From the IMG/VR virus record IMGVR_UViG_3300024259_002152, positions 186,001 to 250,000 of that record: DNA of 64,000 nt. The stretch is one strand, 5' to 3'. The translations under genes and the position numbers were made by a program. The notes under the pieces were generated by a model, which made no database searches, was not told where the DNA came from, and saw only the letters and a program-made list of their open reading frames with translations. Below are positions 34,873 to 56,996 of this stretch, one piece after another (positions within the stretch are counted from its first letter, which is position 1; the number at the start of each line of letters is the position of its first letter).

Positions 34873-34924
34873 GATTGACAGAATGAAACGTGTCTTAAAA
34901 TAGATCAAACATAGGAGATTAAAC

Positions 34925-35374
34925 ATGGCACAAGAAAAGCCTAATTACGAAGTAAATGATGAGTTTAATAATATGGCAGTTCAACTTGTCGAAAAGTATG
35001 CAGAAAAGTTTGACAATATTGAAGTTGGCAAAGTTTGCTGTGTTAATTTAACGAACAAAGATCGTAAAGAAGTAGAAGGAGCAGTAGATCGAATATGGAA
35101 GCTCAAAGCAGTCAAGATGCCTGAAGCTATTCATAATCCTTTCGGGTGGTATGTGATCCTTCATTCCAATGATTGGGACGATATGAGCGACAAGCATAAA
35201 CTTGCCCTTGTAGCTGATGTTCTGCATGGAATACCAAATGAGACAGATAACGATGGTAGAGTTAATCCTTGTAACGTTAAGGGCTATCTTCCTGTCTTCG
35301 AGACCTTAGGAATCAAATATCTTGATGATCCTGATATTCCTCATCTTCTTGATGAAGATGTCGTATGGAAGTAG
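34925..35374 (+). CDS. Phage metallopeptidase-like (PhageMetallopep) protein with degenerate metal site
   Basis: WYVILHSNDWDDMSDKHKLALVADVLHGI matches the family pattern except that HELxH is replaced. Confidence 0.55.
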   Translation: MAQEKPNYEVNDEFNNMAVQLVEKYAEKFDNIEVGKVCCVNLTNKDRKEVEGAVDRIWKLKAVKMPEAIHNPFGWYVILHSNDWDDMSDKHKLALVADVLHGIPNETDNDGRVNPCNVKGYLPVFETLGIKYLDDPDIPHLLDEDVVWK

Positions 35375-35377
35375 ACT

Positions 35378-35596
35378 ATGTATAGAATAGATAAATTTTT
35401 ACAATACTACAATAGTCTCAAGGGTGTTGATATGGAAATCTCTCCAGGGGTTTGGGTCCATGCCCGACCCCTACCATTTTATTATAGTCTTTTCACAAAA
35501 GGATTTTGGAGAGAAAGAAAACAAAGAAAAAAAGATGCTAGAGCTGTCCTGAGGGGAGAAGCAATAGCAGTGACATGGAATTTAGATAAGGATTAA
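35378..35596 (+). CDS. Small hypothetical protein
   Basis: 72-aa ORF in operon spacing. Confidence 0.55.
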   Translation: MYRIDKFLQYYNSLKGVDMEISPGVWVHARPLPFYYSLFTKGFWRERKQRKKDARAVLRGEAIAVTWNLDKD

Positions 35597-35598
35597 AA

Positions 35599-36057
35599 AT
35601 GGCAAAGTTTCAATTATGGTCAAGAGATGAGTATGGACAAGGTAGCATTATAATGACCTCAGAAGATATAGATGAGGTTATTAAGAGAGGTAAGCAGGAA
35701 GTTACTGATCTTAATGTTCAAAATGCTTTAACTTCTACTGATAGAGAAAATAACTGGGAAGCATATTTTGTAAATGTCAAAACTTCGGCAAAACGTTCTC
35801 AAACAAAATATGCTTATGGATCAACTGATGTTCATACTAAGGATAGGGTTTATGCTATTGCAGATAGTGGTGTAAAATCTATTATACTTTCGGAAGTTCC
35901 GAAAGCAGTTGTTGAGATTTATCTTGGTAATATTTCTACGAAGAGAAAAGAGGAGAAAGATTGGATCGGGACAGATTTGAGAGCCAGACCAATTGACAAT
36001 GTAGATCATCCTGATTTACAAGGTAAGACATTGTTTTTTGTTAAGAAGGTTGGATAA
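35599..36057 (+). CDS. Hypothetical protein
   Basis: 152-aa ORF with SD, coupled to the next gene. Confidence 0.6.
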   Translation: MAKFQLWSRDEYGQGSIIMTSEDIDEVIKRGKQEVTDLNVQNALTSTDRENNWEAYFVNVKTSAKRSQTKYAYGSTDVHTKDRVYAIADSGVKSIILSEVPKAVVEIYLGNISTKRKEEKDWIGTDLRARPIDNVDHPDLQGKTLFFVKKVG

Positions 36058-36473
36058 TGGCAAAAAAATTTGATAGTGTAAAAGATAGTGGAGCGCGTGA
36101 GGAATTCTCTACAGGAGCCAGGAGAGATACGCAGGAAGGTAAGGGACGTTTTGACTTGTTGCCTATTAATGCGATGTTTCGGTTGTCTCGTCATTTTGAG
36201 AACGGAGCCGTGAAATATGGAGATTCAAATTGGCTCAAGGGTATACCCTTAAAGAGGTATTTAGATTCCCTATTAAGGCATACTTTCAAATTTGCGGGAG
36301 GTTTAGAAGGGGAAGATCATCTGTGTGCGATTATCTGGAACGCTTGTTGTTTATTGGAAACTCAAGAACTTATTAGACAAGGAAAATTGCCAAAAGAACT
36401 TGATAATTTGCCAGATCCCGTTTTGGACCCAAAGGAATTTAATGAGGAGATAAGAGATTCTGATTCCAAGTAA
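36057..36473 (+). CDS. dATP/dGTP diphosphohydrolase-domain protein (DUF5664)
   Basis: KDSGAREEFSTGARRD..GKGRFDLLP, GAVKYGDSNWLKGIP, YLDSLLRH, EDHL..IIWNA. Confidence 0.88.
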   Translation: MAKKFDSVKDSGAREEFSTGARRDTQEGKGRFDLLPINAMFRLSRHFENGAVKYGDSNWLKGIPLKRYLDSLLRHTFKFAGGLEGEDHLCAIIWNACCLLETQELIRQGKLPKELDNLPDPVLDPKEFNEEIRDSDSK

Positions 36474-44046: not shown

Positions 44047-44683
44047 GAGTGTGGCTAATAAATTTGAAGTTATTATAGGCGTAGATCCAGGAGTAGTTGG
44101 TGGCATATCTATTATTTATAAAAATGGAGTAATTGATATTAATAGAATACCAGTAAAAAAGGTAGTAGTTAATAAGAAAAATAAAAAAACCTATGATTTA
44201 GTTGGTATATCCGAGATATTTGAACCATTTATTAATAAAAAAGTTTTATTTGTCCAAGAGAAAGTATCATCACATCCTGGGGAAGGAAGCGTATCGGCGT
44301 TCAATTTCGGTCGATCTTCGGGATATACTATCGGTATGGCTCATGCTTTGGGTTTCGAGGTAGTAGAGGTGACTCCTCAAGCTTGGAAGAAACACTTTCC
44401 AGAGCTTGTTACTCAAGAGATATTAGTAAAAAAAGAAGAGATTAAGAAATTAAGAGTATTATCTAAAACATTAAAGGATAAACCCTCCCAAAAATTGAAT
44501 AAAAAAGAGATAGATAAGCTAAATAGGCAAATTAAGACGTTAGCCAAAGAAGAAGCTAGGAGTTTAGCTTCTTCTCTATATCCTCAATCAGCAGGTGAAT
44601 TTAAGCAGAAAAATAGTGATGGGATAGCAGAGAGCCTATTAATCTCATTATATGGTAGGGATAATCAAAATGAATTGGTTTAA
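44045..44683 (+). CDS. RuvC-like Holliday junction resolvase (phage type) with a coiled-coil insertion
   Basis: IIGVDPGVVGG, QEKV...GSVSAFNFGRSSG, VTPQAWKK, DGIAESLLI. GTG at 44051 fits SD spacing better than ATG 44045. Confidence 0.82.
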   Translation: MSVANKFEVIIGVDPGVVGGISIIYKNGVIDINRIPVKKVVVNKKNKKTYDLVGISEIFEPFINKKVLFVQEKVSSHPGEGSVSAFNFGRSSGYTIGMAHALGFEVVEVTPQAWKKHFPELVTQEILVKKEEIKKLRVLSKTLKDKPSQKLNKKEIDKLNRQIKTLAKEEARSLASSLYPQSAGEFKQKNSDGIAESLLISLYGRDNQNELV

Positions 44684-45032
44684 ATTTGCAAAAGATTTTG
44701 GTGATAGAAATACGATTAATTCTAAAATAAGGTATCTCAAGATACTAAAAGAAACGATATCTTCTAATTCTAAAATAGTTTTTCAGAGTGGTAAAACAGC
44801 TAAGGATTCGACCTATAGTATCATAACGTCGTCTAAAATTACGTCTTATCCCTCATTGCATGAGGTTCTAATACGAGCAGATTCTTTAGTATTAGATAGT
44901 CCTTGGAAATTTGGAGAATTATGTAGTGATGCCATTAACAAAATAGATCAATTAATATATGCTCTTATAGAAGAGAGAAAAGAGATTACTTATGAAGGAA
45001 AGAAAAAGGGGCCTAAGAAAGGTTGGGTATAA
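44670..45032 (+). CDS. Hypothetical protein with N-terminal MNWFKFAK motif
   Basis: ATG 44670 overlaps the resolvase end. Confidence 0.6.
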   Translation: MNWFKFAKDFGDRNTINSKIRYLKILKETISSNSKIVFQSGKTAKDSTYSIITSSKITSYPSLHEVLIRADSLVLDSPWKFGELCSDAINKIDQLIYALIEERKEITYEGKKKGPKKGWV

Positions 45033-45691
45033 TGTCAAAGAAAAATGATGTGGAACAACATTCTGTCGTAGTAACTAATGCTCCAAATGCAAATGTCGTC
45101 CCGTATTTGTTCAGTTTAGATAGAATAGAAAAAACAAATTGTAATTTATGTCAATGTGAATTTAGGGATGAAGCTGAAGATATCTATGAGAATCAAAAAA
45201 GAAAAAACTATTCGGAGATAAAAAGAAGATTAAAACAAAACCATGATTTTGATGCAACGGTTGGTGGTATAAAAAATCATATGTTGTTTCATTATAAAGC
45301 TGCTCAAAATAATGCTGCTTTGCAGGAATATGCTGAAGATGTGCAGCAATGGGTTAATATGCAGACCAATAAGCTGGTAGCGATGAAATCAAGGATAGCA
45401 GTGCTAGAAAGAGAAATGTTTACTCTTGGTAAAGAGAGTGAAGAATTAGATATTTCTGAAAGAAGAAAAAATGCCGAAACAATGAAAAAATTAGCAGAAA
45501 CTATTCTTACTTATGAAAATAAATTATCAGAATATCAGGAAGAGGTAAAACCTGTGAATCTTGTATTTAATCAGTTAAAAGTCATTGTCAATGATGAGCT
45601 TGCACATGTTGATAATATCAAAACAAGGACTGTGGTAAGCACTATTTTGAAAAGATTGAATGATAGTGTCGGAGAGATGATGATTGAATAA
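45032..45691 (+). CDS. Hypothetical protein: CxxC...HxxxH putative Zn/HTH region plus coiled coil
   Basis: CNLCQC...IKNHMLFH followed by a long heptad-rich region. Confidence 0.5.
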   Translation: MSKKNDVEQHSVVVTNAPNANVVPYLFSLDRIEKTNCNLCQCEFRDEAEDIYENQKRKNYSEIKRRLKQNHDFDATVGGIKNHMLFHYKAAQNNAALQEYAEDVQQWVNMQTNKLVAMKSRIAVLEREMFTLGKESEELDISERRKNAETMKKLAETILTYENKLSEYQEEVKPVNLVFNQLKVIVNDELAHVDNIKTRTVVSTILKRLNDSVGEMMIE

Positions 45692-45864
45692 TGAAAGTAT
45701 GGAATTTTAAAAAACAAAAGATAGAGAATGGGACAGAGTCTCCTGGTTGTAATAGTGTAGATGGAGTTAAAGATTATAAGCCCGTCTTTATGAGTTATAA
45801 GGAGAACGGAGAAAATAGAGTAATTTCAATTAAGGACAATCAAAATGAAACAGATAGAAAGTGA
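45691..45864 (+). CDS. 57-aa ORF missed by the track
   Basis: ATG overlaps the upstream TAA; MKVWNFKKQKIENGTESPGC...NETDRK*; fills the gap and overlaps the next start. Confidence 0.5.
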   Translation: MKVWNFKKQKIENGTESPGCNSVDGVKDYKPVFMSYKENGENRVISIKDNQNETDRK

Positions 45865-46033
45865 AAGTTTAATATATACTCAGAAGAATATTGTGGTGGG
45901 AGATAGAAAGAGAAATGTTATTACTATTGATAAAAAGCCAGGGGCTCAACTGGGTCAAAAAGTAGTGGATAATAAGGTTGTGACAGTAAAGAAAAGAAAA
46001 TGTAGCGGTTGCTCGAGGAGAAGGAAAGGGTAA
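45845..46033 (+). CDS. Small basic hypothetical protein
   Basis: 62 aa ending KKRKCSGCSRRRKG. Confidence 0.55.
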   Translation: MKQIESESLIYTQKNIVVGDRKRNVITIDKKPGAQLGQKVVDNKVVTVKKRKCSGCSRRRKG

Positions 46034-46034
46034 C

Positions 46035-48548
46035 GTGAATAAAGATTTTATCTTATCGGTTTTGAAGAAAGTGAGATTTTTGTTTCCTTTCGTGGTGGAC
46101 TCACCTCATGAGGTTCTTGGGGAGTTGGCGCAAATAATTCCATCTCGATATATGATATTTCCTTGTGATATTATAGATCTTAGACAGTTTATTAGAGAGG
46201 ATAAGATTTCATCTTCGAATCCTATACTGTTTTTTTCTCAAAAATTTGCAGATAAATATTTGAAAGAATATTCAGTGTTTTTAGTTCTTGACTCTCATGT
46301 AGATGTTGTGAATGATCTATACGGAGGTGTTCAAGTTAATTATTGCGATGAACTCCCTTTGTCTCATCTACTTGTTAGAATCCTTATTAACGAACCATCT
46401 GCAAATAACTCTTTCGATGTTGTTAAAAACTTAATGGAAGAATTTAATTTAGGGGTAGAATGTTTGGTATCAAATAGTGTTCCTGGTATTTCTGGTCCTA
46501 GCAAAAAATTGTCATATATAATAGAACCTAAAAAGGCACAAAGAACTATAGGTGTTCCTTCAGACCTCCCTCTTACTCCAAAAGAAAACGATATATTTGA
46601 GTTCTTGAGACAAGTTAAAAAAGATTACAATCTTGATATTCAAATGAGGGTGGCAGGAGGATGGGTCAGAGATAAGATTCTTGGTAAAGAAAGTGATGAT
46701 ATAGATATAGCTGTAGATATGCCAGGTTATGATTTTGCTAAATTGGTGGCCCAAGCTGCCTTTAAGAGCAATATATCTCATGACCCTAAAGCGTATAATG
46801 TTAGTTTAGACAAAGATGCAGACCCAGCCACGAGAGTTGATGATGACAATCTGATGGTAGGGGCTGTAGATTTATTTGGTCAGAAAATAGAATTTGTTCC
46901 AATGAGAACAGAGCACTATCCTGATCCTCAAAGCAGAAAACCTAAAATTACCACAACGAATGATCCAAGAGAAGATGTGAAAAGAAGAGATCTTACAATC
47001 AATTCTATTTATTATAATATAGATACTGGTCAAGTAGATGATTTTGTAGGAGGAGTAGAGGATTTAGGTTTGGAAAGCGGAAAAATGATATTAAGAACAC
47101 CAGATGATGCCAAAAAAACTTATGAAGAAGATCCATTAAGGTTGCTGAGAGCTTTGCGCTTTCATAGTCGTTATCCCAATAGCGAATTAGATCCAGATAT
47201 AATCAAATCAATGTCAGACCCAGACATACAAGAATCTTATGTCAAGAAAGTTGCTGCGTCAAGAGCTGGACCTGAGATAATGAAAATGTTAGTGGGGGAT
47301 AATCCTACTGCATCTTTAAAACTATTATTTGAGAGCGGTTTATATAGGAAAGTTTTTGATGTTCCTGCAATGGGGAATATTAATCCTGATGGTATAGAGA
47401 TGGATCAAAAATCTCCTTATCACAAATATAGTTTATTAGATCATACGATAGAAGTGGTGTCTAATCTTAATAGTATTATGAAAGAGAATGAAGAGCCCGA
47501 TGATATGAGAGGACTTATGAATCTTGCTGCTGTTTTTCATGATTTCGGAAAAATGGATAACAAAGTTGCAAGACCTCATAAACGTCCAAGAGTTCCTGGA
47601 CATACTACTTATGTTGGGCACGAAAGAAGCTCAGAAGATATGGCAGAAGCCATATTGAAATCTATTAACGTGCCAAAAGAAAAAAGAAATTTAGTTAATA
47701 CTGTTATTAAAACACATATGTATCCTCATGATGCTTCGGATTGGAGTAGTAAAAATAAAGGTCCAGGTAATTTTATTGAAAAATTAAAAATAAAAGGCAA
47801 AGGTGGAGTAGATGATTTGTGGAAGTATGTGTTTTATCATGGTCAAGCTGATGCCATGTCGTCTAATCCTGAGACATATGATGAGCAAAAATATAATCAA
47901 GGAAAAGAGTGGTTTGAGCAATATCGTTCTGAACCATCGACAGAATTTACCAGATTTCAAGGAACGTTAATAGATGGTAACGTAGTGGATAATCTCAGGC
48001 AGCAAATAGAGCAGCAGAGACAAGTTCGTATCAGAAAAAACATTATCAGTGATGCTTTACATTTTATTTTACAACAGCAATATACAGGTAATATTGATAT
48101 GTCTTTTGCTTCATTGCCAGAAGGAGCAGATAGAGAGAAAGCTATGAATAAGTCTATTAATGATGCTACTAATAAAGTCAAAGGGTGGATGCTTAATGTG
48201 CATAATAAATATTTAGAACCACCTAAGGGAGGACAGGTTATGGGGTCTAATTGGTTTAAAAAAGTAAAAACTGCACAAGTAGCTGCTCTATCAGGAGATG
48301 TGCAAACTCAAGATCCAGAGATAAAGAAAGGTCCAAAAGAAGCTCTTCCAAAATATCAAGTTGGTATGAAGGTAAGAGATAGAAGAAATTCTGTATCTCA
48401 ACAACAGACCTATGGGGTGGTAGAAGCAATAAAAGGTAATAAAATGAAGATAGTTTGGAATCCTGATAGTAAAGAAAAAAGACAAGAAGAAGTTGTCGAT
48501 ATGGTGGAAAATACTGAAATTTTATCTTTAATTGTTGCGGAGGTATAA
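46035..48548 (+). CDS. cca: Class II CCA tRNA nucleotidyltransferase with HD domain and N- and C-terminal extensions
   Basis: RVAGGWVRD...DDIDIA, EFVPMRTE, DVKRRDLTINS, EDPLRLLRALRF, LLDHT, FHDFGK, YVGHE. Confidence 0.9.
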   Translation: MNKDFILSVLKKVRFLFPFVVDSPHEVLGELAQIIPSRYMIFPCDIIDLRQFIREDKISSSNPILFFSQKFADKYLKEYSVFLVLDSHVDVVNDLYGGVQVNYCDELPLSHLLVRILINEPSANNSFDVVKNLMEEFNLGVECLVSNSVPGISGPSKKLSYIIEPKKAQRTIGVPSDLPLTPKENDIFEFLRQVKKDYNLDIQMRVAGGWVRDKILGKESDDIDIAVDMPGYDFAKLVAQAAFKSNISHDPKAYNVSLDKDADPATRVDDDNLMVGAVDLFGQKIEFVPMRTEHYPDPQSRKPKITTTNDPREDVKRRDLTINSIYYNIDTGQVDDFVGGVEDLGLESGKMILRTPDDAKKTYEEDPLRLLRALRFHSRYPNSELDPDIIKSMSDPDIQESYVKKVAASRAGPEIMKMLVGDNPTASLKLLFESGLYRKVFDVPAMGNINPDGIEMDQKSPYHKYSLLDHTIEVVSNLNSIMKENEEPDDMRGLMNLAAVFHDFGKMDNKVARPHKRPRVPGHTTYVGHERSSEDMAEAILKSINVPKEKRNLVNTVIKTHMYPHDASDWSSKNKGPGNFIEKLKIKGKGGVDDLWKYVFYHGQADAMSSNPETYDEQKYNQGKEWFEQYRSEPSTEFTRFQGTLIDGNVVDNLRQQIEQQRQVRIRKNIISDALHFILQQQYTGNIDMSFASLPEGADREKAMNKSINDATNKVKGWMLNVHNKYLEPPKGGQVMGSNWFKKVKTAQVAALSGDVQTQDPEIKKGPKEALPKYQVGMKVRDRRNSVSQQQTYGVVEAIKGNKMKIVWNPDSKEKRQEEVVDMVENTEILSLIVAEV

Positions 48549-48549
48549 A

Positions 48550-49440
48550 ATGTTACAGGTTGGTTATGGAGGTTATTATTTGGTAGGGGGCAACGTAACA
48601 GAATATGTCGATTCTCCGACATATTATGAGCCTGGTTTTAATGTTATGTACCCAATAGAAATAGCCGCTCCTAAGTCAGATCGTTTTTTCATTCTTATCA
48701 GGAAAAGAGAAGATGAGTCGGGAGATGGTTTTGCCAATTTGGTTGCTACAAATGTTTCAGCGACAGCAGTTGACGCCACTAATGGAGAAAGTCTATTAGT
48801 AAGGACTTCTAATAACACTTTACATCCCGCTTGGAATCAAGATCCATCTTCTACTACTCCTGTTCTCCTACAGATAGATAATCAGTTGGACATGGTTAAT
48901 ACTATTTTAAGAGTAAGAGTAATTGATTGTAAAGTGAAAGATTCGACAGATAATAGTTTTATCAATTTTAGAGTGATTATAGAAGAAGATCCTGAAGATT
49001 TATATTTCAATTATATTCCTGTGCATAGGAGAATATATCCCGATAGAAATACTTTTAGTATTGCTGGTAGGTCAGCATATGTAACATTAAGAAATGATAG
49101 CGATGCTTATTTATTAGTGTCCCCCTATGCTTGGTTAAAGGAAGACACAAAGGATAAGTCAGATTTTTCTTATCCTCAAGATACATTTTATTATCAAATA
49201 GAGAATACTTACAATAGCGAAGACTTTACATTTGCATTATCAAGTTATAGTGATTCTTTTGTGGCTGAACATGTGTCTGTGTTAAATGTCCCAGGGAACA
49301 AAAAAGTAGCTCTTATTTTAATAGATAATGCTATTTATGATTATATATTTCAGTTGAGAAGTGGCGTAAGTTTAGTAATATCTGTTGTGGGAGAACTTAG
49401 TGGTATAGAAGATACGTTTACGGTCAACCTTAATGTATAG
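48550..49440 (+). CDS. Beta-rich hypothetical protein (possibly structural)
   Basis: GGAGG SD before ATG 48550; aromatic, Asn/Thr-rich composition. Confidence 0.55.
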   Translation: MLQVGYGGYYLVGGNVTEYVDSPTYYEPGFNVMYPIEIAAPKSDRFFILIRKREDESGDGFANLVATNVSATAVDATNGESLLVRTSNNTLHPAWNQDPSSTTPVLLQIDNQLDMVNTILRVRVIDCKVKDSTDNSFINFRVIIEEDPEDLYFNYIPVHRRIYPDRNTFSIAGRSAYVTLRNDSDAYLLVSPYAWLKEDTKDKSDFSYPQDTFYYQIENTYNSEDFTFALSSYSDSFVAEHVSVLNVPGNKKVALILIDNAIYDYIFQLRSGVSLVISVVGELSGIEDTFTVNLNV

Positions 49441-49449
49441 GAGCGGGTA

Positions 49450-49962
49450 ATGGGATGGTTTAAAGAGTCACAAAATGAAAATTTTATAGAAAAAGTAAAG
49501 GATATTTTAAAAAAACATTCTTTCACTAACGCAATATCTAACTACTATCATATTCCCATTAGTGAAGTCGATACTCATCTAGAAATAGAGGTGTGTGATC
49601 TTCATGGGAAATTTGCAGAAGGAAATGGTAAATTAATAAGAATAGATAAAAAGTTGTTAGATAATGACTTCTTTGATGAAAATTTTCACTTTGTGATCCA
49701 CGAATTTTTCCATTGGTTGAAGAGAAGGTCAGAAAATAAATTTTACTTCAACGATCCAGAAGAAGTCCAAAGTTTTGTTTTGCAGATGGCTTGGAATTTG
49801 ATAAATGGGAAAAGCGAAGAAGAAGTAACTAGAAAGATTTATCCCATCATTAAGGCTCATTTTAAAGATCAAAATAAATTTGAAGATGTATTTACAGAAA
49901 TGTTAAATAAAGCAATTAATCTCTATCAGATTTATCAGAGAGGGGGAGAATTTTCGATTTAA
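49450..49962 (+). CDS. Putative zincin metallopeptidase with N-terminal MGWFKESQ motif
   Basis: VIHEFFHW (HExxH) with downstream DPEEVQSF. Confidence 0.65.
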   Translation: MGWFKESQNENFIEKVKDILKKHSFTNAISNYYHIPISEVDTHLEIEVCDLHGKFAEGNGKLIRIDKKLLDNDFFDENFHFVIHEFFHWLKRRSENKFYFNDPEEVQSFVLQMAWNLINGKSEEEVTRKIYPIIKAHFKDQNKFEDVFTEMLNKAINLYQIYQRGGEFSI

Positions 49963-49992: not shown

Positions 49993-50709
49993 ATGAAAAG
50001 AATAAAAGTAACGCATTTTTTGCAAGATCCTGCACTTTGTGCAGTAGCCGCAGTCGCTGTTGTAGCAAATTTTTATAATCCAGAGATAACTTATGAGCAT
50101 GTGAAGAAAGTGGCTCATAGAAAAATTAGTAAAAAAATATCCGATGATGGACTATATTCTTCTCAAATATGTATGCTCCTTAATCTTCTAGGATTTCAGA
50201 ATGTATCTTTAGTTACTAGTGATTTTTCATGTATAGATTATTCCTGGTGTGATTATGGAAAAAGAAAGATGAAAGAAGTCCTAGAACAATCAATTTATAC
50301 TAAAAAAGAGAAAGAAGAGAGAGCTTTAACCAAAAATCTTTATAAATGGTATACGTTACAAGGTTATAACAATAGTATTAAAATTGATTATAATTTTGGC
50401 AGGTATATTAGAAAGCAATTAAATAAAAGAAAGCCTCTCATTTTGTCTTTTAATTGGACTATGTTTTTTAAGTTTGCTAAAGAGGGAGAAGTCGGACCAG
50501 ATCCAATAAATGGGGAGTCTGAGGAGCATGCTGTAGTTGCGAATGGTTATGATAAAAATGGAGTATGGGTAGTGGACTCTCATCATAATTACTACACCTA
50601 TAATAGGAAAAAGTATAGAAGAGGTTTTTACAAGATATCTTGGGAAAATTTATTCACTATTATGGGTGAGGGAGATGTGATTATTCCTAATGATTATTAT
50701 ATTGAATAA
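49993..50709 (+). CDS. C39-like (papain-fold) cysteine peptidase
   Basis: HFLQDPALCAVAA (Gln/Cys), KPLIL, EHAVVANGYD...VVDS (His/Asp). Confidence 0.78.
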   Translation: MKRIKVTHFLQDPALCAVAAVAVVANFYNPEITYEHVKKVAHRKISKKISDDGLYSSQICMLLNLLGFQNVSLVTSDFSCIDYSWCDYGKRKMKEVLEQSIYTKKEKEERALTKNLYKWYTLQGYNNSIKIDYNFGRYIRKQLNKRKPLILSFNWTMFFKFAKEGEVGPDPINGESEEHAVVANGYDKNGVWVVDSHHNYYTYNRKKYRRGFYKISWENLFTIMGEGDVIIPNDYYIE

Positions 50710-50721: not shown

Positions 50722-52296
50722 ATGGCTTTTGACAGATATGTAGAGGGGTTTGATCAGTGCGAGCCTCCTGTATGTCCTGAAGATATAGTTATAACTATTA
50801 TCAGTGTTAGTTGCACAGAAGACAAGATGCTGCATGTAGAATGGTTGGTTACCGATAAATATAATAGAGATATTAATGGTAACTATTTAGCATGGTCTTG
50901 TGATAATCAGGATTTAGATACTACTGTTTTTCCTTCCATAGGTCCTACTTCTTATGTCTCTTATTTTGATATCTCTAGCTGTATGGGGATTATTTATTTT
51001 AAAATAAAGGTAAGAATTGGAACTACTTTTTTTGAGGGGGATTTAGAAGCGTTCGATACAGCACTATGTACGTCAAGCGATACAGCAGTTCCAGCATCAT
51101 GGTGCGGGGATTGTCCTGATGGAGTTTCTACACCTCCTCCATATCTACTGTATGTGATATCATCTACTGTTCCTTCATATCCTACATATTTTGACTATGC
51201 AGGGTTATGCTGGTATGTAGATGATAATGAGAATGAAATTTCTATAAGGGATTTGCCAGAAGGAGCTATTTTAACTGGAGCAAGTGAAATATATTCATCT
51301 TGTGAAGACTGTTGCTTACAATTAGATTGTCCTAGTCCTTGGGTAGAATTGCCAGCAGATATTCAAGCATTTGCGGGAGAAAAGGTGGGAGTCTTTTATT
51401 TTGAATATCAGACTTATGATGTTGCAGATCAGTTATTCGTTATTAGGAACTTTTTTGAGCCAGATGATTGTCTCACTGATGATGATGGAAATCTTTTACC
51501 TCCCCCTGATAATAAGATACTATTTGATACGGGTTGTGTGAGTACTAATTTACAGGATTGTCCATCTTTTTTCGTAGATGATCCCCTCTGTATGGATTTT
51601 GCTGCTGCTACTTATGGTTTTTGTGTTAGGGTTAGGGAGGGAGAGTTACCAATAGGTATTCTTAATGTTTGTAATTGTAATGATACCGAAGGCACTTATT
51701 GGAGAATATGTAGTATAGATCCTGATCGCAACATTTCTAATTGGGAAGGTGGAGATGAATGTTTATGCACGGATATGAGTTCTTCAAGCAGTTCTAGCTT
51801 AAGTAGTTCAAGTAGTTCAAGTTCAAGTTCAAGTTCAAGTAGTTCTAGTTCTAGTAGTTCTAGTTCTAGTTCTAGTAGCTCTAGTTCTAGTAGTTCTAGT
51901 TCTAGTTCTAGTTCTAGTTCTAGTTCTAGTAGTTCTAGTAGTTCTAGTAGTTCTAGTTCTAGCAGTTCTAGTTCTAGTAGTTCTAGTAGTTCTAGTAGTT
52001 CAAGTAGTTCAAGTAGTTCTAGTAGTTCTAGTAGTTCAAGTTCAAGTAGTTCTAGCAGTTCGAGTTTAAGTAGTTCGAGTAGCTCTCAAAACTTATGGTA
52101 TCATGCGGCTACAGGATGGACGGGGTCAGGATGCACAGGTATACCTGCTGGTTTGGTGCTCATCTGTCTTCCATCAGGTGTTGCGAATGGAAGATGTTAT
52201 AATGGAAGCTTCTCGGGTCTTCCGAGCGGATGCACAACCCTCGGACCAACAACTCCGTGCTCTGCAATAGATGGGACATATACTGGACCTTGTTAG
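50722..52296 (+). CDS. Cys-rich protein with poly-Ser tract and unique C-terminal tip (paralogue A1)
   Basis: MAFDRYVEGFDQCEPPVCP N-terminus; ~350-aa conserved Cys-rich region; Ser tract; ~70-aa Cys/Gly/Thr tip. Confidence 0.8.
   Translation: MAFDRYVEGFDQCEPPVCPEDIVITIISVSCTEDKMLHVEWLVTDKYNRDINGNYLAWSCDNQDLDTTVFPSIGPTSYVSYFDISSCMGIIYFKIKVRIGTTFFEGDLEAFDTALCTSSDTAVPASWCGDCPDGVSTPPPYLLYVISSTVPSYPTYFDYAGLCWYVDDNENEISIRDLPEGAILTGASEIYSSCEDCCLQLDCPSPWVELPADIQAFAGEKVGVFYFEYQTYDVADQLFVIRNFFEPDDCLTDDDGNLLPPPDNKILFDTGCVSTNLQDCPSFFVDDPLCMDFAAATYGFCVRVREGELPIGILNVCNCNDTEGTYWRICSIDPDRNISNWEGGDECLCTDMSSSSSSSLSSSSSSSSSSSSSSSSSSSSSSSSSSSSSSSSSSSSSSSSSSSSSSSSSSSSSSSSSSSSSSSSSSSSSSSSSSSSSSSSSSSSSSSSLSSSSSSQNLWYHAATGWTGSGCTGIPAGLVLICLPSGVANGRCYNGSFSGLPSGCTTLGPTTPCSAIDGTYTGPC
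51778..52086 (+). repeat. Poly-Ser coding tract (103 codons: 101 Ser, 2 Leu by hand count)
   Basis: Mosaic of AGT TCT, AGT AGT TCT, AGT TCA and AGT TCG units. Confidence 0.95.
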
Positions 52297-52327: not shown

Positions 52328-54010
52328 ATGTTAGATTGTCAAGTAATAACAGAAAACGATGATATCTTTATTTGTAAAAAGATGGGAGAAAGAACCCATT
52401 TTAAAGATTTTAAAATACACAAATCTCAATGTGAGCAGTGCGTGAAAGATGAAGAAATAGTGCTAAGACAGTTTGAAAATAATTTTTATTTTAGCTGTTT
52501 GATAAGTGTCGATCAAATAGATAAATTAGAGAATAAAGAAGAGATTATAGAAAATACTTTAGAATATTTTAGGCATTCTGAAAATGATCCAGATTTAGTA
52601 AATAAATTAAAATCTATGTTATTCTATTTTGTTATGAATCCTAGATTTAAATTTGATCCTATGGACAAATTGAGGTTGGAATATATTTTAAATAATATTG
52701 AAAATTTGAATTTATCGGAATCAATGGAAAGTTTTATTAACGATGATGAAAATTTATATAATTTTTATAAAAAGAACTTATTGGATTTAATGAGTAGTAA
52801 TATAGATGTTTTTAAAAATAGTATTAAACAACAATTAGAAATGGTGGTCGTTACAAAAGATTTTGCTATTCGATTTTTTGGGGAAAATAAAGACAAATTT
52901 GATGATGCTTTTTGTGCCGATTTTCATAAGTCTTTAAAAGAGTATGATAATAATATGGGGAGGATGAAGAAAGATCCTAATTTCGTTCCTGTTTTTAAAG
53001 TATCTTTAATAGATAAAATAAAGGGGGCAAAAGAAGCATTTAAAAGAATAGTAAAGAAATCTAAAGAAGAAGGAAAAGATGCTTTATGGATCAGCGAGAA
53101 AAAAATAATAGAAAGGCAAGTTTGTTGTACTACCTGCACGGATGGAGGAAGTTGTCCTTATTGTGGTTGCCAGATAAAGAAATCATGGTTTTTACCGCTA
53201 GGAAAATCAGAATTGTCAACTGAGGGCTGTCCCAATCTCAATACTTATCCCCATCTTAAAATCTTTCCCTCAAAAAATTATTGGGAAGTGTGTGAAGAAA
53301 AAACTTCTGTGATTATAGTCGCAAGAAATGAAGAAAATTTGAATAAAACTCTTGGAAGTCTTATTGCTAATGCAACAGGAGAAATAGAAATATTAGTTGG
53401 ATTAGATGGGTGCAGATATGATGTTATAAATAATGAAAAAGTTGCTACTTTACAATTTAATCAACATATAGGTAGGAGAAAAATATCTAATCAATTAGTT
53501 AAGTTGGCTACTGGGAAATACTTATTTGAAGTTGATGCTCATTGTGCTGTTTCTTATGGGTGGGATACTAGGTTAAAATGTGTGTGTGATGATAATATTA
53601 TTGTCGGATGTTCTGTTAATTCTATCGATGAAAAATTATGGGGATGTGATGAGGATATTAAATGGGTGGGAGGGAAAATAATAGAAGATGCAAAATGGAA
53701 ATGGGATAAAATTGATAATAATGTTGAGAAGATAGAAGAGGTAGAGAGTTTTAATGCTTGCGGATGGATGATAAGAAAAGATTATTTTGAAAAATTAGAT
53801 GGTCATGATGAAGATCTTGGAGAATGGGGATGGGAGAATGTTGAGTGGACATTAAAGAATAAATCTAATAGTGGTAGAATTATTATAAGAACAGATGTTA
53901 TAGTATCACATCTGTTTCGGAAACAGTATCCCTATGAAATAAAAGGATTAAAGTATAATGATGTAATACAAATATTAAAAAATAAAGACATTTACAAACA
54001 GGGTGTCTAA
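52328..54010 (+). CDS. Glycosyltransferase with polypeptide-GalNAc-transferase-like GT-A domain and Cys-cluster N-terminal region
   Basis: TSVIIVARNE, DAHC (DxH), WGWENVE, SHLFRK; upstream CCTTC...CPYCGC...GCP cluster. Confidence 0.78.
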   Translation: MLDCQVITENDDIFICKKMGERTHFKDFKIHKSQCEQCVKDEEIVLRQFENNFYFSCLISVDQIDKLENKEEIIENTLEYFRHSENDPDLVNKLKSMLFYFVMNPRFKFDPMDKLRLEYILNNIENLNLSESMESFINDDENLYNFYKKNLLDLMSSNIDVFKNSIKQQLEMVVVTKDFAIRFFGENKDKFDDAFCADFHKSLKEYDNNMGRMKKDPNFVPVFKVSLIDKIKGAKEAFKRIVKKSKEEGKDALWISEKKIIERQVCCTTCTDGGSCPYCGCQIKKSWFLPLGKSELSTEGCPNLNTYPHLKIFPSKNYWEVCEEKTSVIIVARNEENLNKTLGSLIANATGEIEILVGLDGCRYDVINNEKVATLQFNQHIGRRKISNQLVKLATGKYLFEVDAHCAVSYGWDTRLKCVCDDNIIVGCSVNSIDEKLWGCDEDIKWVGGKIIEDAKWKWDKIDNNVEKIEEVESFNACGWMIRKDYFEKLDGHDEDLGEWGWENVEWTLKNKSNSGRIIIRTDVIVSHLFRKQYPYEIKGLKYNDVIQILKNKDIYKQGV

Positions 54011-55839
54011 TGGCTTTTGACAGATATGTAGAGGGGTTTGATCAGTGCGAGCCTCCTGTATGTCCAACGGATATAACGATTGAGATTATTAATGTTGTGT
54101 GTGTATCTAATACTTTATATGTTACATGGAGTATTGTAGATAATACCAGCCAGAATTTACTAGATAATCTTAATTCCAATGATCTGCTATGGTCTTGTGA
54201 TAATCAAGATTTTGATAATATTGTTTCTCCTGGATACTCTTCTACCAATATTTATACTGTTTCTTTTGATGTTTCCACTTGTGATGGAGTCATTTATTTA
54301 AAAGTAAAAGCAAAAATAGTTACTACTTTTTTTGAAAGTGGTATAGAAACATTTGATACATCGGGATGTATTGATGTTAGTAATCTAGCAGTTCCTGCAA
54401 TTTGGTGTGGAGATTGTCCTGATATAGTTTCTACTCCTCCTCCATATTTATTATATGTGAGATCTTCTACTGTCCCTTCGTACCCTACATATTTTGATTA
54501 CGGAGGTTTATGCTGGTATGTAAATAGCAGTAATAATGAGATTATGATAGAAGATTTACCAGTAGGGGCCATTTTGACTGGAGCAAGTGAAATATATTCA
54601 TCTTGTGAAGACTGTTGCTTACAATTAGATTGTCCTAGTCCTTGGGTAGAATTACCATCAGACATTCAAGCATTTAATGGAGAAAAGGTAGGAGTCTTTT
54701 ATTTTGAATATAAAACTTATCTCGTTGCTGATAGAATATATGTAGTTAGAAATTTTGATCCAGATGATTGTGATGCAGAAGGACCTTGGACTCCTCCGTC
54801 TGAAAAAATATTATTTGATACAGGTTGTGTAAGTACTAGTGCAGGTCCTTGTCCATCTTTTTTTGTAAGTGATCATTTGTGTTTAAGTTATGGTTCTTCT
54901 ACTTATGGTTTTTGCGTTCGGGTTAGGGAGAGCGAGTTACCTATAGGTCTTGTTAATGATTGTAACTGTAATGATGAGACTACAGATACTAATTGGGAAA
55001 TATGTAGTGTAGATCCTGATGGTGTTATCTCTAATTGGGAAGGTGGGAACGATTGTTTGTGTGAAGATGCCATGTCTTCCAGTAGTTCAAGTTCAAGTAT
55101 AAGCTCAAGCAGTTCAAGCAGTTCAAGTAGTTCAAGCAGTTCAAGTAGTTCAAGTTTGAGTAGCTCGAGTAGTTCTAGCTCGAGTAGTTCTAGTTCAAGC
55201 AGTTCTAGTTCAAGTAGTTCTAGTTCAAGCAGTTCTAGTTCAAGTAGCTCTAGTTCAAGTAGCTCTAGTTCTAGTAGCTCTAGTTCAAGTAGTTCTAGTT
55301 CAAGTAGTTCGAGTTCGAGTAGTTCGAGTTCGAGTAGTTCGAGTTCGAGTAGTTCGAGTTCGAGTAGTTTTAGTAGTTCGAGTTCAAGTAGTTCGAGTTC
55401 AAGTAGTTCGAGTTCAAGTAGTTCGAGTAGCTTAAGTTCGAGTAGTTCGAGTTCAAGTAGTTCGAGTAGCTCAAGTTCGAGTAGCTCAAGTCACGCTGCT
55501 GAGGGTTGTCCCGCTACGTGTGGAGATTGTAGCGAAACTTATAATGTAGAAATAACAGGTTTTACTACTAGTCCTGAGCATAATATTTCTACCACCGTTA
55601 CACGAATTAGTGGATGTCAATGGATAACTGCTGGGATGGGTTTCGGAATGGCAGGAGCAGCTATTGAATGTGCTGGAGGAGTATGGGTAGTGCGTGAATA
55701 TTATTTATTCCCATATGTAATGGCTATAATTCCATCTGGTACAGAACCTCTCGCTTATACTAATGATTGCCCTACTACTAATTCTCCATATAACTTACTA
55801 AGTGCCATAGGAGATACTGGGATAGCAACGGTATCTTAA
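54010..55839 (+). CDS. Cys-rich protein with poly-Ser tract and unique C-terminal tip (paralogue A2)
   Basis: First 56 nt identical to A1; same Cys framework; different ~115-aa tip. Confidence 0.8.
   Translation: MAFDRYVEGFDQCEPPVCPTDITIEIINVVCVSNTLYVTWSIVDNTSQNLLDNLNSNDLLWSCDNQDFDNIVSPGYSSTNIYTVSFDVSTCDGVIYLKVKAKIVTTFFESGIETFDTSGCIDVSNLAVPAIWCGDCPDIVSTPPPYLLYVRSSTVPSYPTYFDYGGLCWYVNSSNNEIMIEDLPVGAILTGASEIYSSCEDCCLQLDCPSPWVELPSDIQAFNGEKVGVFYFEYKTYLVADRIYVVRNFDPDDCDAEGPWTPPSEKILFDTGCVSTSAGPCPSFFVSDHLCLSYGSSTYGFCVRVRESELPIGLVNDCNCNDETTDTNWEICSVDPDGVISNWEGGNDCLCEDAMSSSSSSSSISSSSSSSSSSSSSSSSSSLSSSSSSSSSSSSSSSSSSSSSSSSSSSSSSSSSSSSSSSSSSSSSSSSSSSSSSSSSSSSSSSSSSSSSSFSSSSSSSSSSSSSSSSSSSSLSSSSSSSSSSSSSSSSSSSHAAEGCPATCGDCSETYNVEITGFTTSPEHNISTTVTRISGCQWITAGMGFGMAGAAIECAGGVWVVREYYLFPYVMAIIPSGTEPLAYTNDCPTTNSPYNLLSAIGDTGIATVS
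55075..55491 (+). repeat. Poly-Ser coding tract (139 codons, 135 Ser by hand count)
   Basis: AGT/AGC-TCN mosaic with I, L, F, L interruptions. Confidence 0.95.
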
Positions 55840-55946: not shown

Positions 55947-56996
55947 ATGACTTTTAATAGATATACAGAAGGATTTGATCAATGCGGACCGCCATCATGT
56001 CCTGAGGATGTGATAGTAGAAATTACAAATAAGACATGCACTAATGATAACACATTGCATATAGAATGGACTGTCGTAGACAGGTATAACAGAAATCTAG
56101 ATCTAAATTCTGTTTTATGGTCTTGTGATAATCAGAATTTTAATAATACTTCTTACCCAGAAAATGATTTTCAGCCATATGAAACTTCTTTTGATGTTTC
56201 TAGTTGTGAAGGTATTATTTATTTAAAAGCAAAGGTAAGAATTGGTACAACTCTTATAGAAAGTAAGGTAGAAACATGCGATACGGCTTTGTGTGATACA
56301 ATTAGTAATCTAGCAGTTCCTGCAATTTGGTGTGGAGATTGTCCTGATACTGTTTCTAATCCTCCTTTATACTTATTGTATGTGAGATCTATGACTGTCC
56401 CTTCATATCCTGCATATTTTGATTACGGAGGGTTTTGCTGGCATTTAACTAATGATAATAACGAGGTATCTACGGATGATTTACCAGAAGGGGCTATTTT
56501 AACTGATATAGATACCTCTTATCTATATTGCAATGATTGTTGTTTAAAATTAGATTGTCCCAGTTCGTGGGTGGAGTTGTCGGCTGATGCCCAAGAAACC
56601 CCAGGAGAAAGGGTGGGAGTTTTTTACTTTGAATATCAAACGACTATTTGTCCTGATAGATTTTATGTTATTAAGAATTTTGTGGATAGTGATTGCACTG
56701 CTGCGGGGGCATGGACTCCAGAGTCAGATAAAATATTATTTGATACGGGTTGTATCGCAACTAGTTTAGAAGAGGGTCCATCATTTTTTGCTGGTAATCA
56801 TTTATGTTTAGATTATGGAGAGCCCACATATGGTTTTTGTTTAACTGTTAGAGAGGGAGATTTACCTATAGGTATTGTTAATGATTGCGATTGTTCAGAT
56901 AATTGCAATACTACTTGGAAAATATGTAGTGTAGATCCTGATGGTAGCATTCTTAATTGGGAAGGTAGTAATGAATGTCTATGTGAGGAAATTTAG
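55947..56996 (+). CDS. Cys-rich paralogue A3 lacking the Ser tract and tip
   Basis: MTFNRYTEGFDQCGPPSCP; 25 Cys by hand count; ends CLCEEI* exactly where A1/A2 enter poly-Ser. Confidence 0.8.
   Translation: MTFNRYTEGFDQCGPPSCPEDVIVEITNKTCTNDNTLHIEWTVVDRYNRNLDLNSVLWSCDNQNFNNTSYPENDFQPYETSFDVSSCEGIIYLKAKVRIGTTLIESKVETCDTALCDTISNLAVPAIWCGDCPDTVSNPPLYLLYVRSMTVPSYPAYFDYGGFCWHLTNDNNEVSTDDLPEGAILTDIDTSYLYCNDCCLKLDCPSSWVELSADAQETPGERVGVFYFEYQTTICPDRFYVIKNFVDSDCTAAGAWTPESDKILFDTGCIATSLEEGPSFFAGNHLCLDYGEPTYGFCLTVREGDLPIGIVNDCDCSDNCNTTWKICSVDPDGSILNWEGSNECLCEEI

What the first reader, a model, noticed from the sequence alone, without database searches (positions are those of the whole stretch)
44670..49475. 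Shared N-terminal 'WFK' peptide on three unrelated proteins: possible targeting signal
Seen: MNWFKFAK (44670), MGSNWFKKVKTAQ (internal ATG 48240 in the CCA ORF) and MGWFKESQ (49450) begin otherwise unrelated sequences; MKVWNFKK (45691) may be a variant. Established: T4 internal proteins share a ~10-aa N-terminal capsid-targeting sequence. Inference: M-x(1-3)-W-(F/Y)-K-x(1-4)-(A/S)-(Q/K) is a packaging or scaffold-binding tag for proteins carried in the virion, perhaps removed by the neighbouring proteases.
Basis: partly seen in the sequence, partly recalled or inferred. Interest (0 to 1): 0.62.

Follow-up and report, generated by a model that had tools for sequence, protein, structure and literature searches.

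The report
Shared N-terminal tag on phage effectors
A clade of huge bacteriophages starts dozens of otherwise unrelated enzymes with the same eight-residue peptide (Met-Asn-Trp-Tyr/Phe-Lys-Lys-Ala-Gln); it behaves like an address label, possibly one that loads these enzymes into the virus particle, but its function has not been tested.

Summary
The window lies in a 351-kb phage record. Three window proteins begin M-x(1-3)-W-F-K: a four-helix-bundle protein, a small module nested in the CCA-enzyme ORF, and a zincin-like metallopeptidase. The fourth candidate (45691) is a non-conserved ORF and is rejected.

The consensus M-N-W-Y/F-K-K-A/S-Q is held in 117/120 and 70/71 homologues of two of these families. 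It heads about 20 proteins in a complete 548-kb relative and 50 non-redundant proteins overall, often in tandem arrays. It is nearly absent from 596 Gb of prokaryote genomes. Conservation stops at residue 8, synonymous codons vary, and AlphaFold leaves the tag unpacked, so it looks like a portable peptide read by a common partner.

The tagged proteins are typical counter-defence or "polyvalent-protein" domains: ART-PolyVal, zincin, SLT, HicA, P-loop kinase, 2H/Acb1-like and cREC.

The internal ATG at 48240 is a likely real start. It has the best Shine-Dalgarno match of all in-frame ATGs in four orthologues, and the module is a separate gene in relatives.

A T4-CTS-like packaging role is the best guess (about 0.35) and is unproven. 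There is no evidence that neighbouring proteases remove the tag.

The parts
44670..44693 (+). Tag copy A: MNWFKFAK, the first 8 codons of gene A
   Evidence: The orthologues begin MNWFK or MSWYK. 70 of 71 database homologues carry M-x-W-[FY]-K, and W3 is invariant.
44670..45032 (+). Gene A: a 120-aa protein of unknown function with a four-helix-bundle fold, tagged
   Evidence: AF2 mean pLDDT is 86.5. Residues 1-10 are coil with pLDDT 58. Foldseek finds only generic four-helix bundles. There is no Pfam or PHROG hit.
46035..48548 (+). CCA-adding-type nucleotidyltransferase ORF (PolyA_pol head, RNA-binding and HD domains). Its last ~100 residues are module B.
   Evidence: Pfam hits PF01743, PF12627 and PF01966. 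Orthologues at 52-60% identity are present in G001-G003.
48225..48233 (+). Internal Shine-Dalgarno sequence AAGGGAGGA, 6 nt before the ATG at 48240
   Evidence: Its anti-SD duplex energy is -11.3 kcal/mol, the best of 26 in-frame ATGs. The equivalent ATG is also ranked first in G001, G002 and G003, although the encoded flanking residues differ.
48240..48278 (+). Tag copy B: MGSNWFKKVKTAQ, a two-residue-longer variant (W-F-K-K-V-K-T-A-Q)
   Evidence: It is conserved as M-x(1-3)-N-W-[FY] in at least 15 of 19 fused homologues.
48240..48548 (+). Nested in-frame gene B: a 102-aa tagged module, possibly an SH3-like barrel (a lead only)
   Evidence: It is a separate gene in relatives. In L091 1637-1963 (starts MRNWYKK, 108 aa) no CCA gene is present. 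P0312 follows a stop codon. The ESM Atlas gives only weak SH3-type leads.
49450..49473 (+). Tag copy C: MGWFKESQ
   Evidence: 117 of 120 homologues start M-[NGS]-W-[FY]-K. M1, W3 and K5 are invariant alongside the catalytic H84, E85 and H88.
49450..49962 (+). Gene C: a 170-aa minimal zincin-like metallopeptidase (HEFFH), tagged
   Evidence: AF2 mean pLDDT is 85, with residues 1-4 below 50. The weak best Foldseek hits are minigluzincins, SprT and IrrE. The G004 orthologue gives a weak Tox-MPTase3 hit.
49993..50709 (+). Untagged neighbour: a C39-like cysteine peptidase, syntenic with gene C in all five genomes. It is context, not a shown part of the system.
   Evidence: Pfam PF13529 at 6e-11. 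Q11, C16, H179 and D195 are conserved. Synteny.
45691..45864 (+). Rejected candidate: a 57-aa ORF starting MKVWNFKK
   Evidence: It has no W-[FY]-K and no conserved counterpart in G001-G003.

Best explanation
The peptide M-N-W-Y/F-K-K-A/S-Q is a portable eight-residue N-terminal address tag. It is used by one clade of huge phages (about 200-550 kb) to mark a variable set of accessory enzymes. It works at the protein level and at, or very near, the free N-terminus. It is probably read in trans by one common phage-encoded partner.

On this reading the phages have taken apart the multi-domain 'polyvalent proteins' of other phages into single-domain genes, and each gene needs its own ticket.

Shown: the tag exists, it is conserved, it is portable, it is position-specific, and it sits on effector-type domains. 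The start at 48240 is a nested gene.

Inferred: a common receptor exists. Guessed: the destination is the virion.

The confidence given (0.35) is for the virion-packaging function. For the weaker claim, a peptide-level tag recognised by a shared partner, I would give about 0.8.
For: (1) Conservation.
- W3 is invariant, and M1 and K5 are invariant or at least 90% conserved, in two deep families. They are as conserved as the catalytic HExxH.
- The logo from 50 non-redundant tagged proteins carries information only at residues 1-8 and then falls to background.

(2) Selection acts on the peptide, not the DNA.
- Asn is coded AAT 25 times and AAC 19 times. GCA/GCT, CAA/CAG and AAA/AAG all vary.
- Lys is replaced by Arg through both AGA and CGT, Tyr by Phe, and Ala by Ser.

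(3) Portability.
- The tag heads at least 15 unrelated families.
- The same ART-PolyVal domain occurs without the tag in cultured Brevibacillus, Dickeya, Pectobacterium and Cronobacter phages. Their alignments begin at residue 6-13 of the tagged protein.

(4) N-terminal position matters.
- Met is two residues before Trp in 44 of 50 tagged proteins.
- In the CCA-B fusion, an ATG with the best SD match of 26-30 in-frame ATGs is kept in four orthologues despite divergent flanking residues.
- A Met precedes the tag in at least 15 of 19 fused homologues.

(5) The tag is not part of the folds. AF2 gives pLDDT 57-58 for residues 1-10 and 86-96 for the adjoining blocks, in two different folds.

(6) The cargo is of the kind predicted or known to travel with phage DNA.
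- Pfam finds ART-PolyVal, zincin peptidase, SLT, HicA, AAA_33 kinase, 2H/Acb1-like, cREC, HTH and DUF5661.
- PMC5512222 describes these as domains of polyvalent proteins.
- PMC3012670 describes the T4 precedent.

(7) Distribution.
- The tag is virus-restricted and lineage-restricted: at least 15 further IMG/VR contigs, beyond the window's genome and its four relatives (19 relatives in all), against one real hit in 596 Gb of prokaryote contigs.
- Arrays lie beside an HK97-like capsid gene in L074, and beside capsid-like ORFs recognised only by similarity to it in L081 and L085 (no Pfam hit).
Against: - No proteomic or structural result places a tagged protein in a virion.
- No receptor was found, and the capsid, scaffold and portal of the window's genome could not even be annotated.
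- The tag has no similarity to the T4 CTS and no conserved protease site at its end.
- Some tagged proteins are odd cargo: an aldo/keto reductase, HTH proteins, and an SLT protein with a transmembrane helix directly after the tag.
- In L074 the array is transcribed divergently from the structural genes. That would also fit early, non-packaged effectors.
- Internal tag copies without a start codon exist in fused proteins, so an N-terminal position is not absolute.
Confidence: 0.35

Rival explanations
1. The tag is a docking peptide for a destination inside the infected cell rather than the virion. It would bring diverse early effectors to one hub, such as the ribosome or tRNA-repair machinery, the inner face of the membrane, or a phage-built compartment or scaffold protein.
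For: - All the evidence for a trans-recognised tag also fits this reading.
- Many of the cargo proteins act on RNA or translation: the CCA-enzyme module, cREC, a PNK-like AAA_33 kinase, 2H phosphoesterase, HicA and ART.
- The W-Y-K-K chemistry suits a membrane interface or RNA.
- One tagged SLT protein has a transmembrane helix straight after the tag, which would keep the tag cytoplasmic.
- The L074 array is divergent from the late structural genes.
Against: - The strict identity of residues N2, A7 and Q8 is more than simple membrane or RNA affinity would need.
- No hub candidate was identified.
- There is no precedent known to me for such a shared docking peptide in phages.
Confidence: 0.25
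2. The tag is a processing or turnover signal. It would be a recognition site for a phage peptidase (the tagged zincin C or the adjacent C39-like enzyme), or a pro-degron whose trimming exposes Trp/Tyr and so times the destruction of the effectors.
For: - A tagged zincin and a C39-like cysteine peptidase sit side by side in all five genomes.
- C39 enzymes are leader-peptide peptidases.
- In multi-module proteins the tag marks module junctions, where cleavage would release the domains. PMC5512222 proposes this for polyvalent proteins.
- Cutting before W3 would create a classical bacterial N-degron (my own knowledge of the ClpS pathway).
Against: - There is no double-glycine site and no conserved residue after position 8.
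- A cleavage site placed two residues from the N-terminus releases nothing.
- The conserved internal start of module B argues that a free N-terminal tag is wanted, rather than a junction to be cut.
Confidence: 0.15
3. The tag is mainly a cassette-boundary sequence. A short conserved stretch at the start of every module would let modules be swapped, fused or split by recombination, as at the VENN or Rhs junctions of polymorphic toxins. The peptide itself would have little function.
For: - Tagged genes form tandem arrays.
- The same 'Y-x-D-I-G-H' module occurs alone and also as the C-terminus of a 721-aa neighbour, with the tag at the junction.
- Module B is free in some phages and fused to the CCA gene in others.
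- Two tag copies lie 37 nt apart in different frames at one gene junction in G002.
- PMC5512222 noted cassette-like small ORFs near polyvalent genes.
Against: - 15-24 nt with variable synonymous sites is poor recombination homology.
- Every cassette has its own start codon, and often its own SD.
- Purifying selection holds W3 and K5 across more than 100 homologues that sit in fixed synteny and are not being shuffled.
Confidence: 0.1
4. The tag is a translation-initiation feature: an mRNA or nascent-peptide 'ramp' that boosts or co-regulates the expression of accessory genes.
For: - The motif is tied to the start codon (Trp is residue 3 in 44 of 50 tagged proteins) and is A/U-rich.
- ATATAA lies within 25 nt upstream of 18% of tagged starts against 6% of other starts. 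This hints at short leaders or a shared promoter.
Against: - Substitutions are conservative at the amino-acid level, not the nucleotide level: Lys to Arg through CGT, Tyr to Phe, Ala to Ser.
- Copies are kept inside fused ORFs without any start codon.
- SD strength at tagged starts is about the same as at other genes.
- An invariant UGG has no known role in initiation.
Confidence: 0.08

Closest known systems
Capsid targeting sequence (CTS) of phage T4 internal proteins IPI, IPII, IPIII and Alt
   Same: Both are short (about 10 aa) N-terminal peptides shared by otherwise unrelated proteins. The proteins are often anti-defence proteins encoded in variable loci. [quoted passage not shown]
   Different: There is no sequence similarity: the T4 CTS as I recall it is acidic and ends in a Glu cleavage site, whereas this tag is basic, with an invariant Trp and no Glu. 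The phage lineage is different. Packaging and cleavage are demonstrated for T4 and are untested here. This system has many more tagged families (about 20 per genome).
Polyvalent proteins of phages and conjugative elements (Iyer, Burroughs, Anand, de Souza and Aravind 2017, PMC5512222)
   Same: The domain repertoire is the same: ART-PolyVal, zincin-like metallopeptidase, SLT/lysozyme, 2H, Pol-beta nucleotidyltransferase, and kinase-like domains. The predicted role is counter-defence at the moment of DNA entry.
   Different: Polyvalent proteins join 2-15 domains in one polypeptide. Here most domains are separate genes, each with its own tag, and only a few are fused. My term searches of the paper's text found no mention of a shared N-terminal or Trp-containing motif.
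Encapsulin cargo-loading peptides
   Same: They are short terminal peptides that direct unrelated enzymes into an HK97-fold shell encoded nearby. Tag arrays lie next to an HK97-like capsid gene in L074, and next to capsid-like ORFs in L081 and L085.
   Different: Encapsulin peptides are usually C-terminal and have a different consensus (from my knowledge). The contigs here are fragments of huge tailed-phage genomes, not nanocompartment operons.
Junction motifs of polymorphic toxin cassettes (CdiA VENN, Rhs PxxxxDPxGL)
   Same: Both are conserved short motifs at the boundary before a variable module. Arrays of alternative modules lie next to larger genes, and fused and free forms of the same module both occur.
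   Different: The toxin motifs are internal, and their orphan cassettes generally lack their own translation start. Here the motif is at the N-terminus of independently initiated genes.
In-frame nested genes of phage head operons (for example lambda C/Nu3); relevant only to the 48240 start
   Same: A smaller protein is made from an internal SD plus ATG, in frame with the C-terminal part of a larger ORF.
   Different: Here the nesting arose by fusion of a formerly separate tagged gene to a CCA-enzyme gene. Expression from the internal start is inferred, not measured.

Membership tests
T4-type capsid targeting sequence | An N-terminal peptide of about 10 residues shared by otherwise unrelated proteins of one phage | tested here: met
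   The same 8-residue tag heads 50 non-redundant proteins. There is no similarity beyond it.
T4-type capsid targeting sequence | Sequence similarity to the T4 CTS consensus, ending in a prohead-protease site (L/I-x-E) | tested here: not met
   The logo is M-N-W-Y-K-K-A-Q, with no conserved Glu and background-level information from residue 9 onward. The T4 consensus is quoted from my own knowledge.
T4-type capsid targeting sequence | Tagged proteins are present in the virion, and the tag is sufficient to package a foreign protein | not testable with these tools
   There is no cultured relative in INPHARED and no proteomic data. This needs virion mass spectrometry and reporter fusions.
Polyvalent proteins (PMC5512222) | Carries domains of the polyvalent repertoire (ART-PolyVal, zincin MPTase, SLT, 2H and others) | tested here: met
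   Pfam hits are PF18760 at 8e-15, SLT, 2_5_RNA_ligase2/Acb1, cREC_REC, HicA and AAA_33. The zincin fold of gene C is supported.
Polyvalent proteins (PMC5512222) | 2 to 15 such domains in a single polypeptide | tested here: not met
   Most tagged genes encode one domain of 75-310 aa. Only a few larger proteins carry two tag copies.
Double-glycine leader peptides cleaved by C39 peptidases | An N-terminal leader of 15-30 residues ending in Gly-Gly or Gly-Ala before the mature protein | tested here: not met
   The conserved part is 8 residues and has no Gly-Gly. The catalytic domains begin 9-25 residues from the N-terminus.
Sec/Tat/lipoprotein signal peptides | A hydrophobic h-region after a basic n-region, followed by a signal-peptidase site | tested here: not met
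   No hydrophobic stretch follows the tag in 49 of 50 cases. Globular domains follow directly. The one exception is an SLT protein with a transmembrane helix.
Polymorphic-toxin cassette junctions | The motif is internal, at the junction between a constant region and a variable C-terminal domain, and orphan cassettes lack their own start | tested here: not met
   A few internal junction copies exist, but most copies follow an ATG and are independent genes.
CCA-adding enzyme / poly(A) polymerase family (the ORF that contains site B) | PolyA_pol head domain plus an RNA-binding region | tested here: met
   PF01743 at 1.9e-24, PF12627 at 4e-6, and HD at 5e-4. The tagged module B lies outside these domains.

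The most novel reading that the evidence does not exclude
The eight residues are a sequence-readable 'effector address code' for a whole lineage of huge phages. On this reading, any ORF that begins M-N-W-Y-K-K-A-Q is a protein loaded into the head and co-injected with the DNA. The complete injected arsenal, about 20 enzymes per genome with many of unknown fold, could then be read directly from metagenomes. The tag could also be used to load foreign cargo. It would be a second, independently evolved capsid-targeting system that replaces the polyvalent-protein strategy with tagged single-domain genes.
Probability: 0.3. Interest if true: 0.85.

Novelty: new variant of a known kind. Interest (0 to 1): 0.72.

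Why it matters
If the tag is an address label, it gives a one-line rule for listing the accessory or counter-defence proteins of an uncultured clade of 200-550-kb phages. About half of these proteins have no recognisable family. It would show that the 'deliver many activities at once' problem, which other phages solve with giant polyvalent proteins, can also be solved with a shared ticket on separate genes.

It would also provide a minimal eight-residue handle for cargo loading or co-localisation.

Whatever the function turns out to be, the finding corrects the annotation of the CCA-enzyme gene, which holds a nested tagged gene. It also fixes the true start codons of genes A and C and their homologues.

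Tried and rejected
- Complex prediction. The C39-like peptidase (alignment A3) was folded with tagged protein A (alignment A2). The score was 0.01, which the tool reports as no verdict. It is not evidence either way.
- Literature strings. The terms MNWYK, MNWFK, NWYKK and NWFKK returned only dengue-epitope coincidences. A keyword search for packaged or co-injected anti-defence proteins with N-terminal signals found nothing that describes this motif.
- PHROGs gave no hits for A, B, C, D or E. It gave almost none for large tagged proteins or for the structural region of G000, so the scaffold, portal and protease could not be named.
- Capsid search. Pfam Phage_capsid gave no hit in G000. The L074 capsid protein matched only a 32-residue stretch.
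- The ESM Atlas gave nothing for A and only weak SH3-type leads for B.
- PDB sequence search. D gave only a non-significant NEK1 kinase N-lobe match (E = 0.31) and E gave none. 'Kinase-like' for D therefore remains a lead.
- Co-occurrence of C39 with tag arrays in other contigs. It was present in 2 of 5, but these are 14-42% fragments, so the result is uninformative.
- 45691 MKVWNFKK is rejected.
- G002 72532 (D-W-Y-K inside an NAD-ligase HhH-BRCT region) and L084 (inside a glycosyltransferase) are chance matches.
- The idea that the tag-bearing contigs of 47-104 kb are ordinary-sized phages is rejected. CheckV rates the five that were checked (47-87 kb) as 14-42% complete.

Full report
**Setting.** The window is bases 186001-250000 of a 350,866-bp IMG/VR virus record, G000 (73% complete, about 33% GC, genes almost all on one strand). 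Around the finding, the plus-strand genes are:
- a putative RuvC-like gene (my reading of the sequence; no Pfam hit);
- gene A (44670-45032);
- a 218-aa protein and two small ORFs;
- an 837-aa CCA-adding-type nucleotidyltransferase (46035-48548; PolyA_pol head, RNA-binding and HD domains);
- a 296-aa protein;
- gene C (49450-49962);
- a C39-like cysteine peptidase (49993-50709).

This gene order is kept in four related huge-phage records: G001 (298 kb), G002 (548 kb, complete), G003 (219 kb) and the more distant G004 (188 kb).

**Checking the observation.** A scan of the whole genome found two more genes that begin the same way: G000 294472-295050, starting MNWYKRANLQ, and G000 10431-9736 on the minus strand, starting MNWYKKVKISS.

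The orthologues of A, B and C in the relatives keep the peptide while the rest of each protein diverges to 37-80% identity.
- In the 5.8-billion-protein collection, 117 of 120 homologues of C and 70 of 71 homologues of A begin M-[NSG]-W-[FY]-K.
- In the alignments, M1, W3 and K5 are as invariant as the HExxH catalytic residues of C.

The statistics are clear.
- W[FY]K is preceded by Met within four residues in 27 of 84 cases, against a 9% background (p = 2e-9). NW[FY]K is so preceded in 15 of 19 cases.
- MNW[FY]K occurs 18 times and its reverse never.
- The DNA pattern has 15 hits against 0 for the backwards control in the four relatives.
- The 24-nt pattern for MNWYKKAQ has 12 IMG/VR stretches against 0 for its reversal.

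The fourth, tentative case at 45691 is not conserved and does not fit the motif.

**Anatomy of the tag.** I compiled 50 non-redundant tagged N-termini from five genomes and 12 further loci.
- The logo is M1 (88%), N2 (88%), W3 (100%), Y4 (90%; otherwise F), K5 (88%; otherwise R), K6 (62%), A7 (64%; S 18%) and Q8 (56%; K 16%). From residue 9 the information content is at background.
- Synonymous codons vary freely, and the replacements are conservative at the protein level. Lys becomes Arg through both AGA and CGT. Selection therefore acts on the peptide.
- The catalytic domains begin almost at once. The first strand of the ART domain is at about residue 9, and the P-loop strand at about residue 12.
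- AlphaFold2 models built on 54-sequence alignments give two unrelated folds: a four-helix bundle for A and a zincin-like alpha/beta protein for C. In both, the first ten residues have pLDDT 57-58 against 86-96 for the adjoining blocks.

A segment that is the most conserved part of a protein but is not packed into its fold is the signature of a short linear motif read by something else.

**The 48240 start is a nested gene.**
- In G000, G001, G002 and G003 the ATG before the tag has the strongest anti-Shine-Dalgarno pairing of all 26-30 in-frame ATGs of the CCA ORF (-11.3, -8.4, -8.2 and -8.8 kcal/mol). The residues that encode that stretch differ between the genomes.
- An exhaustive phmmer search with the 102-aa module found it at the C-terminus of 770-850-aa enzymes and also as proteins of about 100 aa. 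In at least 15 of 19 fused forms a Met lies 1-4 residues before N-W.
- Two contexts prove that the module can be an independent gene. In L091 the order is RuvC-like, an A homologue (which begins M-W-Y-K-K-A-K), the 218-aa homologue, a 58-aa gene, then module B alone (108 aa, starting MRNWYKK), then the 296-aa homologue. There is no CCA gene at all. In another contig the module follows a stop codon.

So module B was a tagged gene that became fused in frame to a CCA-enzyme gene, and its own ribosome-binding site and start codon were retained. This argues that the tag is wanted at a free N-terminus. G004 shows the counter-example: a fused copy (N-N-W-Y-K) without a start codon.

**How widespread the tag is, and what it sits on.**
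- G002 has 17 clear copies, plus variants such as M-N-W-H-K, M-N-W-Y-S/N-R and M-N-W-Y-R. Most lie in clusters at 5-9, 32, 58-62 and 114-122 kb.
- G000 and G002 are colinear except that G002's first 165 kb, which holds those clusters, has no counterpart in the incomplete G000 record. G000 probably has more tagged genes than the five seen.
- Other IMG/VR contigs show back-to-back arrays of 4-8 small ORFs that all begin with the tag. The five of these contigs that were checked are 14-42% fragments of large genomes.
- In 596 Gb of bacterial and archaeal genomes the pattern has only two hits. One is chance. The other is a 19-kb phage-like contig binned into a MAG, with five tagged ORFs in a row.

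Pfam recognises about half of the tagged proteins. The hits are ART-PolyVal, AAA_33 P-loop kinase, SLT transglycosylase, HicA, cREC receiver, 2H phosphoesterase/Acb1-like, HTH_23, DUF5661 and aldo/keto reductase, with weaker Tox-MPTase3 and KTSC hits. This is essentially the domain vocabulary of the 'polyvalent proteins' described by Iyer et al. (PMC5512222). Those authors predict that such proteins enter the host with the DNA and are processed by embedded zincin peptidases.

The same ART domain (47% identical) occurs in cultured Brevibacillus phages without the tag. Across the cultured phages the alignments start only at residue 6-13. The tag is therefore an add-on specific to this clade.

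Some larger proteins carry a tag at the N-terminus and another at an internal module junction. One recurrent module (motif Y-x-D-I-G-H) is found both free and as the C-terminus of its 721-aa neighbour.

**Mechanism.**
- What is shown: the tag is a conserved, portable, position-specific peptide that is not part of the folds it precedes. It marks a lineage-specific set of effector-type genes.
- What follows by inference: one common partner recognises it (about 0.8).
- What that partner does is open. I rank virion packaging first (0.35) for three reasons. First, the T4 capsid-targeting sequence is the one established case of a ~10-residue N-terminal peptide shared by unrelated, rapidly varying anti-defence proteins (PMC3012670). 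Second, the cargo types are those thought to travel with phage DNA. Third, splitting a polyvalent protein into single genes creates exactly the need for a ticket on each one.
- Weak extra support: arrays sit beside an HK97-like capsid gene in L074, and beside capsid-like ORFs in L081 and L085 that I recognised only by similarity.
- Against it: no virion data, no receptor, no cleavage motif, some unlikely cargo, and an array transcribed divergently from the structural genes.

The rivals are intracellular docking (0.25), a processing or degradation signal (0.15), a recombination junction (0.10) and a translation ramp (0.08). They are set out with their evidence in the rival explanations. The fused and free forms, and the duplicated tag at one G002 junction, show that modules are shuffled at tag boundaries. 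I take this to be a consequence of the shared sequence rather than its purpose.

**Comparison and novelty.** The system works like the T4 CTS and, more loosely, like encapsulin cargo peptides. It is not a member of either family, because the sequence and the cleavage-site features are not met. I found no description of the motif in the literature I could search. I cannot exclude one in papers that the library does not hold. I class it as a new variant of a known kind.

**Limits.** Hosts are unknown. G002 is deposited inside a 'Candidatus Asgardarchaeia' MAG and L085 inside a 'Halanaerobium' MAG; either may be a binning artefact. Gene starts were inferred from ORFs, Shine-Dalgarno pairing and conservation, not from data. 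The read-mapping tools were not used.

Noticed in passing
window 50722-52296, 54010-55839, 55947-56996: Three paralogous proteins share a different N-terminal peptide (M-A/T-F-D/N-R-Y-V/T-E-G-F-D-Q-C, followed by a Cys/Pro-rich stretch). The first (50722-52296) carries a very long poly-serine tract; the other two were read only at their N-termini. This is a second 'shared N-terminus' family right next to the finding.
   Followed up: no
window 59608 and 60266: Two adjacent genes are each preceded by the same upstream stretch, which translates as F-S-K-E-L-Q before the Met. One of the genes begins like a vWA-domain protein. This is a repeated intergenic or ribosome-binding element.
   Followed up: no
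window 46035-48548 (internal start at 48240): The CCA-enzyme ORF contains an in-frame nested gene with its own strong SD. In relatives that lack the CCA gene, the module is a separate gene. Annotation pipelines will miss it.
   Followed up: yes
G000 29210-36449 (outside the window): A 77-aa ORF (30137-30367) resembles only the first ~30 residues of the HK97-like capsid protein of L074. It is flanked by two paralogous Zn-finger genes (29210-30133 and 35544-36449). The capsid gene may be interrupted by mobile elements, or it may be too divergent to recognise.
   Followed up: partly
L081 2-439, 999-1268, 1268-1582 and 447-989: Three small ORFs have twin-arginine-like N-termini (M-N/K-R-R-S-F) joined to pieces that resemble capsid-protein segments. 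A C39 peptidase gene lies between them.
   Followed up: no
G002 (the record behind L005) and L085: The complete 548-kb relative is deposited at NCBI as part of a 'Candidatus Asgardarchaeia' MAG. A 19-kb tag-bearing contig is deposited in a 'Halanaerobium' MAG. The true hosts are unknown, and the genes use bacterial-type SD sites.
   Followed up: no
G002 114885-114934 (minus strand); L013 14881-14934: Two copies of the tag lie 37 nt apart in different frames. One forms the last 18 codons of a PcfJ-like 525-aa ORF and the other starts the next gene. This looks like a scar of recombination at the tag.
   Followed up: partly
25 nt upstream of the tagged starts (for example G000 294447-294471): ATATAA-type sequences lie directly upstream of 18% of tagged start codons, against 6% of other starts. 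This may be a shared promoter with a very short leader.
   Followed up: partly
G002 5359-5829 (minus strand): A tagged HicA-toxin homologue is immediately preceded by a 77-aa ORF that begins with a tag variant (M-N-W-Y-S-R). Both members of a possible toxin-antitoxin-like pair may therefore carry the tag.
   Followed up: no
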